Source of the DNA: Sminthopsis crassicaudata
Taxonomy: Eukaryota
Reading direction: 5' to 3'
Assembly: GCF_048593235.1 (NCBI RefSeq)
Contig: NC_133623.1
Location: 1,550,001-1,614,000, forward strand
DNA: 64,000 nucleotides
Shown here piece after piece: positions 43,101 to 44,402 of this stretch (its first letter is position 1; every line of letters begins with the position of its first letter). Position numbers and translations under genes: made by a program. The notes under the pieces are model-generated. The model saw only the letters and a program-made list of their open reading frames with translations. It was not told the origin of the DNA and did not search any database.

Positions 43101-44402
43101 CCTGAAGGTCCCTATCTGAGGTGCTTCTCTCCAGAGAGATGCCAAGAGTATGGAGAATCAGACAAATCGTGTGCCAGATCGTGAACGTGAAGCTCAGGCG
43201 CAGGGGGATGACCCTTCGGAGCCCCACGGGGCCAAAGGCTTCGGCCTAGACTCCCCCTCCAGTTTAGATGTGTCCAGTGGGATCTCCCCGAGGTAATCAA
43301 TGAACTCATCCCAGAGTAAGAGAGGGGAGAGCAAAGAGGTTATGGCAGACCCGGGATCCAGGAGGGCCCGGCTGCCCTGCGCTCCACTTCGGAGCGGACA
43401 GAGGGATGAGAGCACAGCCGGATAGAGATGGCCAGCAAGACCGAACTAACGGGATGGAGCTGCCCCTGCCTGCCAGCTCACCATCTCTGGCCAAGCCTAC
43501 CTCAGTAGAGATCTTGCGGGCCGGATGGTTTCGCATTCGGACCCTCACGGGTGATTGCACCTCATCAGAGGACGTGGCTGATGCCTGGTCGCTCTCCCCA
43601 TCTGAACCAATCTTCAAATCTTCATGCACGATCTCTGGGGTGGAGTAGGGGTCGGCTCAGTAGCCACAGGCATCCCTCCTTTCCCTTCAGCTTGCCCTTT
43701 CCCTCCCCCCCCACCCTCCCTCACCCTCTAACACACGACAGCCTCAGAGGCCCTCGGACACTCGGTGCCCCAGAACCACTCCAGAGAGCCGGACCTCTGC
43801 ATAAAGCACAGGCCTAGAACCGGGCTGGAAGTCAGAGGCCGCAGACACGGCGGGCCAGGCCTCGGCCAGCCGAGCCGGGGGGGCATATAGTCACCTAGTC
43901 TGGTGCCATGGTCCAGTGGGGAGCTGAGGCTGCGACTGGCCCGGGGCCGGCGGGCCGGCGGCGGTGGAGGCTGCCGGGGTGCCCAGGGGGTGGGGCCAAG
44001 GGCGGGCAAGCTCCTGGATGCTCGGGGGGGCAGGCGAACCGTGGGTAGCAGGCTGTGGGACGAGGGCAAGATGCCCTTCCTCCCACCAGGGCTAGGGCCT
44101 GGGCCATGGAGCAAAGCCAAAGGGAGGGTGGGTAATGGACAGGGGATGACACATGGGAATAGCAGGAAGCACACAAGAAAGGAAGAAAAGGGAGAAAACA
44201 AATCACCCAAATCCGAAGGGAGCCGCCCAGCGACAGGGAGACCCCAGTGGGCCCCCAGAAGCCTCTTGGGCCTGCCCTCACCATTGTCACTGCAGTTACT
44301 GTCTTCGATGTTGATCTGCTCTGAGCCACCGCTCTTCTCTGAGGGTCGGCTTCCCCGGAGCGTCATGGAGAGCTGCCGCTTGATCTTCTTCATTCGGTCC
44401 AT
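40185..44402 (-). CDS. CDK16: Cyclin-dependent kinase 16 (PCTAIRE-1), complete: 469 aa without or 537 aa with the extra exon
   Basis: Exons (minus): 44402-44282,[44098-43895],43634-43501,42622-42497,42351-42295,42195-42081,41965-41871,41784-41722,41630-41507,41364-41244,41149-41052,40948-40843,40750-40708,40572-40482,40382-40305,40222-40185. Has [19 protein letters not shown] helix, [11 protein letters not shown] and C-terminus ...RVVDTEF*. Confidence 0.98.
43895..44098 (-). CDS. CDK16: Additional 204-nt symmetric (phase 1-1) CDK16 coding exon
   Basis: Pyrimidine-rich acceptor ...ttgctccatggcccag| and donor CTAG|gtgact; stop-free in the frame joining both neighbours. Confidence 0.75.
   Translation of the reverse strand, partial: ALALVGGRASCPRPTACYPRFACPPEHPGACPPLAPPPGHPGSLHRRRPAGPGPVAASAPHWTMAPD

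What the first reader, a model, noticed from the sequence alone, without database searches (positions are those of the whole stretch)
43895..44098. Marsupial CDK16 carries an extra 68-codon exon resembling the CDK17 N-terminal exon
Seen: coding exon 1 stops after 40 codons (…SNCSDN), 27 fewer than human (469 versus 496 aa). A 204-nt phase 1-1 exon follows: [68 protein letters not shown], joining EIVHE. Recalled: CDK17 has EPIVKNGRPPTSHSM...KPPLRRP...NGSRL-DIVHE here, so both ends match (PSSHSL/PTSHSM; HGTRL/NGSRL). It has RASRSL twice and a mode-I 14-3-3 motif RSLSSP. Inference: an ancestral PCTAIRE exon that eutherians collapsed into a longer exon 2 (human RSARGPLSSAP resembles RASRSLSSP); skippable, giving 469 or 537 aa isoforms in the cyclin Y/14-3-3 regulatory region.
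Basis: partly seen in the sequence, partly recalled or inferred. Interest (0 to 1): 0.75.

Follow-up and report, generated by a model that had tools for sequence, protein, structure and literature searches.

The report
Ancestral CDK16 cassette exon, already annotated
The 204-base stretch is a real, alternatively spliced coding exon of the kinase gene CDK16; it is old and shared by vertebrates, already sits in public gene models of this species, and placental mammals have let it decay rather than merging it into a neighbouring exon.

Summary
Window 43895-44098 (minus strand) is a 204-nt, phase 1-1 exon with AG/GT borders that joins ...SNCSDN to EIVHE. Assembled RNA contigs from three studies hold both the inclusion and the skipping form.

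It is not new. The peptide is 100% identical to NCBI "CDK16 isoform X4 [Sminthopsis crassicaudata]". Models of eight marsupial species and both monotremes carry it intact.

It is not marsupial-specific. It is the ancestral PCTAIRE cassette exon, found at the same position in CDK16 of squamates, amphibians, lungfish, coelacanth, bichir, teleosts and sharks, and in CDK17. The phase is shown to be the same in an amphisbaenian CDK16 and a sturgeon CDK17. Skipped isoforms are annotated in many of these lineages. Dunnart versus opossum gives dN/dS 0.19 with no indels.

Eutherian models can contain both the long first coding exon (ending ...PLSSAP) and a separate degenerate copy of the cassette. In puma that copy lies 176 nt downstream of the long exon and is frameshifted with a stop.

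The cassette also lies about 40 residues upstream of the cyclin Y-binding extension (human residues 109-165), not inside it. Its role as a phospho/14-3-3 site is inference only. Low interest.

The parts
44282..44402 (-). Coding part of the first coding exon of CDK16: ATG to ...SNCSDN plus 1 base. The exon's acceptor is at 44408.
   Evidence: RNA contigs cover 44282-44408 in X5, X6 and X7.
44099..44281 (-). Intron 1: 183 nt, GT..AG, in frame and stop-free in this species. It contains a candidate alternative donor, GATTTGG|GTGATT, with last exon base 44207.
   Evidence: The joint 44282>44098 is seen in 4 runs, and one collinear (unspliced) contig 44070-44310 in X6. The opossum intron is 179 nt, so the open frame is not conserved. 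The alternative donor is modelled only in the devil (P0015) and was not seen in the reads.
43895..44098 (-). The cassette exon: 204 nt, phase 1-1, 68 codons including the split ones. It encodes a Pro/Arg/Ser-rich segment with RASRSL twice and RSLSSP once.
43635..43894 (-). Intron 2: 260 nt. Its donor GTGACTAT is identical in opossum, platypus and puma.
   Evidence: The joint 43895>43634 is seen in X5, X7 and X15.
43503..43634 (-). Next constitutive exon, (E)[18 protein letters not shown]...RKISTE, joined either to the cassette or directly to exon 1.
   Evidence: The skipping joint 44282>43634 is seen in X5, X7 and X15.
44485..44720 (-). Alternative upstream exon spliced to 44408. It carries an in-frame ATG at 44553 that would add about 25 residues.
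   Evidence: Joint 44406>44483 (cut +2) and contig 44483-44720 in X7. The sequence was read; the in-frame reading is my own reading of that sequence.

Best explanation
Window 43895-44098 (minus strand) is the ancestral N-terminal cassette exon of the PCTAIRE kinases CDK16 and CDK17, here in CDK16 of the fat-tailed dunnart or a near-identical genome.

It sits between the exon ending ...SDN and the exon starting EIVHE. It is in phase 1-1, so including or skipping it keeps the reading frame. Both mRNA forms are made.

In non-eutherian vertebrates the exon encodes a disordered-looking segment. Its 5' block is conserved ([ST]SHS[LM]) and so is its 3' block (RRP[RH]..., RSLSS.L, ...RL). In the mammalian stem the middle was replaced or expanded by a Pro/Arg-rich stretch that repeats the RASRSL unit: twice in marsupials, with a further related unit in monotremes.

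In eutherians the first coding exon became 27 codons longer and splices directly to EIVHE. The cassette was left behind in the intron, where it is decaying. It is still open and modelled in hystricomorph rodents and Kogia, and frameshifted in puma.

Shown: exon borders, splicing both ways, conservation under purifying selection, orthology to non-mammalian CDK16 and CDK17 exons, and the separate relic in eutherians.

Inferred (about 35%): inclusion adds basophilic-kinase phosphosites, which in marsupials match an exact RSxSxP 14-3-3 mode I pattern. This would add a phospho-dependent docking or regulatory module to the flexible far N-terminus, upstream of the cyclin Y-binding extension.
For: - Sequence and splice sites.
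- RNA: one 263-nt contig joins exon 1, the cassette and exon 3, and one 59-nt contig joins exon 1 directly to exon 3, in each of X5, X7 and X15 (three studies). Contig depths are 230.7/99.6, 8.66/23.6 and 25.3/31.1.
- Annotation: 100% match to NCBI CDK16 isoform X4 of Sminthopsis crassicaudata, 99% devil, 91% opossum, 61% platypus. An intact 68-aa cassette occurs in models of 8 marsupial species and an 80-aa one in platypus and echidna.
- Constraint, dunnart versus opossum: cassette 89.7% nt identity with 0 gap columns, against 69% and 64% per column with 32 and 27 gap columns in the flanking introns. dN/dS is 0.19, 13 of 21 differences are at third positions, and the other two frames give values above 1.
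- Orthology: alignment A2. A profile HMM built only from non-mammalian CDK16/CDK17 cassettes scores the dunnart peptide 16.4 bits; 0 of 2000 shuffles reach it. A separate phase 1-1 exon is seen in an amphisbaenian CDK16 locus and a sturgeon CDK17 locus.
- Skipped isoforms SDN|EIVHE are annotated in lizard, snake, frog, shark, sturgeon, marsupials and platypus.
- Eutherian relic: (46% identity, E 3e-10).
Against: - The runs are Logan contigs whose RNA status is only a guess by the tool. That they are RNA follows from the spliced joints themselves. Contig depths are crude, so inclusion levels are rough, and tissues are unknown because ids are coded.
- No protein-level evidence exists for either isoform.
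- The exact RSxSxP pattern is marsupial-only. Platypus has RGLSST and non-mammals RSLSS[YFH], so a 14-3-3 role is not a conserved, demonstrated property.
- The origin of the eutherian 27-codon extension from former intron sequence is positional only. Local DNA alignment to marsupial intron 1 is no better than shuffles.
Confidence: 0.9

Rival explanations
1. One reading: the exon is an ancestral PCTAIRE exon that eutherians collapsed into their longer first coding exon, so the human ...RSARGPLSSAP tail descends from RASRSLSSP.
For: Superficial motif resemblance. The eutherian exon is 27 codons longer.
Against: - Eutherian models of Octodon, Heterocephalus, Fukomys and Kogia contain both ...PLSSAP and, after it, a separate 72-aa homologue of the cassette that ends ...SRNLSSPLEQGAPP or similar.
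- In the puma locus the long exon is one contiguous block with its own donor at L001:1665. The relic lies at 1842-2056 with the same AG acceptor context and the same GTGACTAT donor as in dunnart.
- The puma extension has no DNA similarity to the dunnart cassette; its score is below the shuffle mean.
Confidence: 0.03
2. The exon is a chance open frame in GC-rich intron DNA, or splicing noise or a model artefact without protein function in marsupials.
For: - The region is 61-65% GC, and a 342-codon open frame runs straight through exon 1, intron 1, the cassette and into intron 2, so open frames are cheap here.
- The peptide is low-complexity.
Against: - No indel in 204 nt between dunnart and opossum, while both flanking introns have many.
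- dN/dS is 0.19 in this frame and above 1 in the other two.
- It is intact in 8 marsupial and 2 monotreme species.
- Its depth is comparable to or higher than the skipped form in RNA contigs of three studies.
- It is homologous to a conserved exon of fish, amphibian and reptile CDK16 and of CDK17.
Confidence: 0.03
3. The exon is constitutive in marsupials, and the skipped form is an artefact of assembly or annotation.
For: In X5 the inclusion contig is deeper than the skipping contig. Many X1 models include it.
Against: A 59-nt contig with the exact 44282>43634 joint occurs in three runs from three studies, at depths of 23.6 to 99.6. Skipped models exist in at least eight marsupial species and in platypus.
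Confidence: 0.04

Closest known systems
NCBI RefSeq/Gnomon CDK16 isoforms of marsupials and monotremes, e.g. isoform X4 and X8 of Sminthopsis crassicaudata, X11 of Monodelphis domestica (537 aa) and X4 of Ornithorhynchus anatinus (549 aa)
   Same: They contain this very exon: 100% identity in the dunnart model and 91% in opossum. Platypus is 61% identical with a 12-residue in-frame insertion.
   Different: Nothing; this is the same feature. The models are computational, and I found no paper that describes the exon.
The corresponding coding exon of CDK17 (PCTAIRE-2), EPIVKNGRPPTSHSM...KKPPLRRPHS...NGSRL
   Same: - Same place between ...KDN and DIVHE.
- Same phase 1-1: 165 nt in the sturgeon locus L005.
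- Shared 5' block P[ST]SHS[LM] and shared 3' block PP.RRP[RH]...SL.S...RL.
   Different: The CDK17 middle (HSFLHQYAGSF) is replaced in mammalian CDK16 by a Pro/Arg-rich stretch with a second RASRSL unit. CDK17 has GGSLGSF where CDK16 has RSLSS. I saw no skipped CDK17 model among the hits, but did not look for one.
The CDK16 cassette of non-mammalian vertebrates (coelacanth P0012, lungfish P0014, frogs P0046/P0058, squamates P0018/P0023/P0053, bichir P0030, sharks P0021)
   Same: Orthologous exon with the same neighbours. It is also alternatively skipped in annotated isoforms (P0074, P0078, P0119, P0100, P0101). The donor is GTGACTAC in the amphisbaenian against GTGACTAT in mammals.
   Different: It is 47-55 residues instead of 68-80, nearly identical to the CDK17 version in sarcopterygian fish, and has no +2 proline after the RSLS serine.
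The relic of the cassette in eutherian CDK16 introns (modelled as isoforms in Octodon, Heterocephalus, Fukomys, Chinchilla, Kogia, Bos mutus, panda and a bat)
   Same: Same position and same splice-site contexts. It is 46% identical to the dunnart peptide in Octodon (E 3e-10) and retains ..ASR.LSALG.. and ..SR.LSSPL...
   Different: Most arginines are lost. It does not score above shuffles against the non-mammalian profile. In puma it is 215 nt with a stop in the entry frame. It follows a first coding exon that is 27 codons longer.

Membership tests
PCTAIRE (CDK16/CDK17) N-terminal cassette exon | Lies between the exon ending ...[SK]DN and the exon starting [ED]IVHE | tested here: met
   Window sequence, protein N-termini of 120 hits, alignment A2 and loci L002-L005.
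PCTAIRE (CDK16/CDK17) N-terminal cassette exon | Separate exon, phase 1-1, length a multiple of three | tested here: met
   204 nt in dunnart and opossum and 240 nt in platypus. 165 nt in sturgeon CDK17, and a separate exon in amphisbaenian CDK16.
PCTAIRE (CDK16/CDK17) N-terminal cassette exon | Conserved 5' block [ST]SHS[LM] and 3' block RRP[RH]...SLSS.L...RL | tested here: met
   Alignment A2. The profile of non-mammalian cassettes scores the dunnart peptide 16.4 bits, and 0 of 2000 shuffles reach it. The middle of the exon is not conserved.
PCTAIRE (CDK16/CDK17) N-terminal cassette exon | Alternatively included or skipped (CDK16 lineage) | tested here: met
   Both joined forms occur in contigs of X5, X7 and X15. 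Skipped and included models exist in many vertebrates.
14-3-3 mode I binding site (R-S-x-pS-x-P) | Sequence pattern RSxSxP | tested here: met
   RSLSSP is present in the window peptide and in all 8 marsupial species. It is not conserved outside marsupials: platypus RGLSST, non-mammals RSLSS[YFH].
14-3-3 mode I binding site (R-S-x-pS-x-P) | Serine is phosphorylated in vivo and the phosphopeptide binds 14-3-3 | not testable with these tools
   No data. Published 14-3-3 binding to CDK16 concerns S119 in a different exon (PMC13168255).
Cyclin Y-binding N-terminal extension of CDK16 (helices aN1-aN3, human residues 109-165) | Segment lies within the region that contacts cyclin Y | tested here: not met
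   The paper places the extension at residues 109-165 and its model starts near residue 107. The cassette is inserted after human residue 67, ahead of the EIVHE exon, and the extension begins only after that exon at DINKRLSLP.

The most novel reading that the evidence does not exclude
Non-eutherian vertebrates switch CDK16 between two N-terminal states by splicing a cassette about 450 million years old. The cassette carries the family-conserved RRPxS...RSLSS phospho-module, which in marsupials is an exact 14-3-3 mode I site, doubled by an internal repeat. Eutherians alone abandoned this switch, extending the first coding exon and letting the cassette decay. If so, eutherian CDK16, the only form studied biochemically, would lack a regulatory input that CDK17 and all other vertebrate CDK16 proteins retain.
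Probability: 0.3. Interest if true: 0.45.

Novelty: already known. Interest (0 to 1): 0.22.

Why it matters
As a genome feature it is ordinary: a correctly annotated alternative exon. There are two modest points of value.

First, the evolutionary reading is corrected. The exon is a vertebrate-wide PCTAIRE cassette that eutherians lost from their main transcript while lengthening exon 1. It is neither a marsupial addition nor a eutherian fusion.

Second, all biochemical and structural work on CDK16 regulation uses the eutherian protein, which lacks this segment. Anyone transferring CDK16 results to CDK17 or to non-eutherian models should know that a conserved Ser/Arg-rich module sits about 40 residues upstream of the cyclin Y-binding extension in those proteins.

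Tried and rejected
- The look-up of encoding contigs found nothing on record for seven proteins: P0008, P0009, P0029, P0084, P0007, P0004 and P0135. Only the longest product of a gene is indexed. Loci were obtained instead for puma, opossum, platypus, an amphisbaenian and a sturgeon CDK17.
- I tested whether the eutherian 27-codon exon-1 extension is recognisably homologous to marsupial intron 1. Local alignment was no better than shuffles (1036 and 287 of 2000 shuffles reach the score). The MAFFT pairing is therefore not evidence, and the origin is left as a positional inference. At the ancestral donor position puma reads GGAGAG where dunnart reads G|GTGAG. This is suggestive only.
- The in-frame, stop-free intron 1 (183 nt) could suggest a coding retained intron. 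The opossum intron is 179 nt, so the open frame is not conserved and is probably chance. The unspliced contig in X6 may be pre-mRNA.
- Two literature searches found no paper on this exon.
- Two scripts failed on hmmsearch command-line problems and a third stopped before scoring; the test was rerun.
- Tandem-repeat search found only trivial short repeats in the exon.
- Not done: the third word search and the representative search. They were not needed and were flagged as costly.
The first search used the natural uninterrupted ORF window:43731-44756:- with the region option, and later ones used protein ids returned by tools. In a local script the cassette was translated together with the one base before and two bases after it, only to complete the split codons.
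- The protein search returned a few entries labelled Homo sapiens or unlabelled Logan entries (P0069, P0077, P0113). They appear in the N-terminus table only. No human contig was fetched, saved or compared.

Full report
**1. What is in the sequence**

On the minus strand the CDK16 start codon is at 44402. The first coding exon ends at 44282, after 40 codons (...SNCSDN) plus one base, and is followed by GTGAGG.

After a 183-nt intron comes ...GGCCCAG| and then a 204-nt stretch, 44098-43895. This stretch is followed by |GTGACTAT. After a 260-nt intron comes ...CCCCAG| and the exon that begins (E)IVHEDLK at 43634.

A 342-codon open frame runs through exon 1, intron 1, the cassette and into intron 2. 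The region is 61-65% GC. An open frame alone therefore means little here, and independent evidence was needed.

**2. Is it spliced?**

One run search and one laying of contigs were allowed. In three runs from three different studies (X5, X7, X15) two contigs appear:
- A 263-nt contig consists of 31 nt of exon 1, the whole cassette and 29 nt of the EIVHE exon, with joints 44282>44098 and 43895>43634.
- A second, 59-nt contig joins 44282 directly to 43634.

These are the two branches of a cassette-exon bubble. Depths for inclusion/skipping are 230.7/99.6, 8.66/23.6 and 25.3/31.1. Contig depths are crude, so I say only that both forms are substantial and that their ratio differs between samples.

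The tool lists the runs as 'RNA?' (a guess). The spliced joints themselves show they contain RNA.

A fourth run (X6) has the 44282>44098 joint and also an unspliced contig across intron 1.

**3. Is it known?**

The natural ORF that contains the exon was used as the query, with the cassette as the scored region. The best hit is NCBI 'cyclin-dependent kinase 16 isoform X4 [Sminthopsis crassicaudata]' at 100%. The window is therefore almost certainly fat-tailed dunnart.

The next hits are Tasmanian devil (99%), opossum isoform X11 (537 aa, 91%) and platypus isoform X4 (549 aa, 61%).

Cluster look-up shows the intact 68-residue cassette in models of Sminthopsis, Sarcophilus, Antechinus, Macrotis, Phascolarctos, Vombatus, Monodelphis and Gracilinanus. 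An 80-residue version occurs in platypus and echidna.

Skipped models (SDN|EIVHE) exist for devil, koala, wombat, bilby, sugar glider, monito del monte, tammar and opossum, and for platypus (469 aa).

The feature is thus already in public annotation. I found no paper that discusses it.

**4. Constraint**

The opossum (L002) and platypus (L003) loci were fetched and the exons mapped.

Dunnart versus opossum:
- Cassette: 89.7% nucleotide identity with no gap column, like the EIVHE exon (90.2%).
- Flanking introns: 69% and 64% identical per column, with 32 and 27 gap columns.

In the coding frame dN/dS is 0.19, and 13 of 21 differences are at third positions. The two other frames give 1.2 and 2.8.

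Platypus differs by a 36-nt in-frame insertion. The donor GTGACTAT is identical in dunnart, opossum, platypus and puma. This is a protein-coding exon under purifying selection.

Its dS (0.28) is lower than in the neighbouring exons. That is usual for alternative exons, but the numbers here are small.

**5. Where it comes from**

A search with the first 150 residues of the opossum protein returned CDK16 and CDK17 of many vertebrates. Their N-termini and alignment A2 show a segment at exactly this place in:
- CDK16 of coelacanth, lungfish, axolotl, frogs, a caecilian, lizards, snakes, bichir, teleosts and sharks;
- CDK17 of shark, chimaera and sturgeon.

The ends are conserved: ...DN|[EG]P..K.G.P[ST]SHS[LM] at the 5' end, and PP.RRP[RH]..[GS]RSLSS.L.R..RL|EIVHE at the 3' end.

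The middle (HSFLHQYAGSF) is replaced in monotremes and marsupials by a Pro/Arg-rich stretch. This stretch repeats the RASRSL unit: two copies in marsupials, and a further related unit in platypus.

A profile built from the non-mammalian segments alone scores the dunnart peptide 16.4 bits. None of 2000 composition-preserving shuffles exceeds 6.4.

In an amphisbaenian CDK16 locus and a sturgeon CDK17 locus the segment is one separate exon in phase 1-1.

Skipped isoforms are annotated in lizard, snake, frog, shark and sturgeon CDK16. The exon is the vertebrate default and not a marsupial extra.

**6. What eutherians did**

All eutherian proteins returned have a 67-residue first coding block ending ...PLSSAP before EIVHE.

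Models of Octodon, Heterocephalus, Fukomys and Kogia have, after ...PLSSAP, a further 72-residue segment that is clearly the cassette. Shorter versions occur in panda and a bat, and alternative-start versions in Chinchilla and Bos mutus. Dunnart versus Octodon gives 46% identity, E 3e-10.

In the puma locus:
- The 67-residue block is one contiguous exon with its donor at L001:1665.
- The relic lies at 1842-2056, with the acceptor context ...GCCCAG| and the donor |GTGACTAT preserved.
- The relic is 215 nt long, and reading from the entry phase meets TGA.

So the cassette was not merged into the longer exon. It was left in the intron and is eroding, while the first coding exon grew by 27 codons.

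I could not show by sequence where those 27 codons came from. Alignment to marsupial intron 1 and to the cassette is no better than shuffles. That they are former intron sequence, exposed when the old donor was lost, is a positional inference. Puma reads GGAGAG where dunnart reads G|GTGAG.

**7. Function**

The cryo-EM study of CDK16 with phospho-cyclin Y and 14-3-3 (PMC13168255) places the cyclin Y-binding N-terminal extension at human residues 109-165. It discusses 14-3-3 binding at S119 and inhibition through S153. Its model starts near residue 107.

The cassette enters after human residue 67 (marsupial residue 40). That is one exon upstream of the extension, in the part that is flexible and unmodelled.

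What the sequence offers is a basic Ser/Pro-rich segment with [12 protein letters not shown]:
- It has arginines at -3 and -5 of the serines, a pattern typical of basophilic kinases.
- In marsupials only, it matches the exact RSxSxP pattern.
- RSLS is conserved across vertebrate CDK16.

My best guess (about 35%) is a splice-controlled phospho-docking module. This is inference, not shown.

**8. Verdict**

The feature is real and the description accurate. Interest is low. The residual value is the corrected evolutionary account, plus the reminder that the well-studied eutherian CDK16 lacks a segment that CDK17 and all other vertebrate CDK16 proteins keep.

Searches were by window reference, exon-level reference or tool-returned protein ids.

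Noticed in passing
window 43503 and downstream (minus strand); proteins P0001-P0004: The dunnart and devil models that first matched (isoforms X4, X5, 5-T5) go from ...RKISTE straight to SEIGFGK. They skip the 42-residue exon DINKRLSLP...RRVSL, which makes up most of the cyclin Y-binding N-terminal extension and holds the inhibitory S153-equivalent site. If real, these isoforms should not bind cyclin Y.
   Followed up: no
window 44485-44720 and 44915 onward (minus strand): Two different upstream exons are spliced to the acceptor at 44408. One ends at 44485 (X7 contig, 76-nt intron) and has an in-frame ATG at 44553 that would add about 25 residues. The other ends at 44915: the loose ends in X6 and X7 match window 44915-44944.
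   Followed up: partly
window 44099-44281 (minus strand): Intron 1 is 183 nt, in frame and free of stops, and one run holds an unspliced contig across it. The opossum intron is 179 nt, so the open frame is probably chance. A devil model (P0015) uses a downstream donor here that adds 25 residues. The same motif, GATTTGG|GTGATT, is present in the window with last exon base 44207, but no read used it.
   Followed up: partly
window 38132-38362 (minus strand): The cassette peptides give a weak secondary tblastn match (37-39% identity, E 1e-5 to 1e-9 on the window alone) in an extremely GC-rich block (74-84% GC at 38000-39500). An analogous match lies just past the end of the opossum CDK16 gene. It is probably a Pro-rich first exon of the neighbouring gene and low-complexity similarity only.
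   Followed up: no
proteins P0028, P0037, P0040-P0044, P0066, P0072 (sharks and rays): Cartilaginous fish CDK16-like genes have a second, independently skippable 30-residue cassette (GRTTQSGFLPFH...QN) between ...SDN and the ancestral cassette. This gives four annotated N-terminal combinations.
   Followed up: no
L003:1471-1710 (platypus), P0139 (echidna): The monotreme cassette is 12 residues longer. It carries three related PPPRA..(SLPAL) units where marsupials have one, which points to tandem expansion inside the exon.
   Followed up: no
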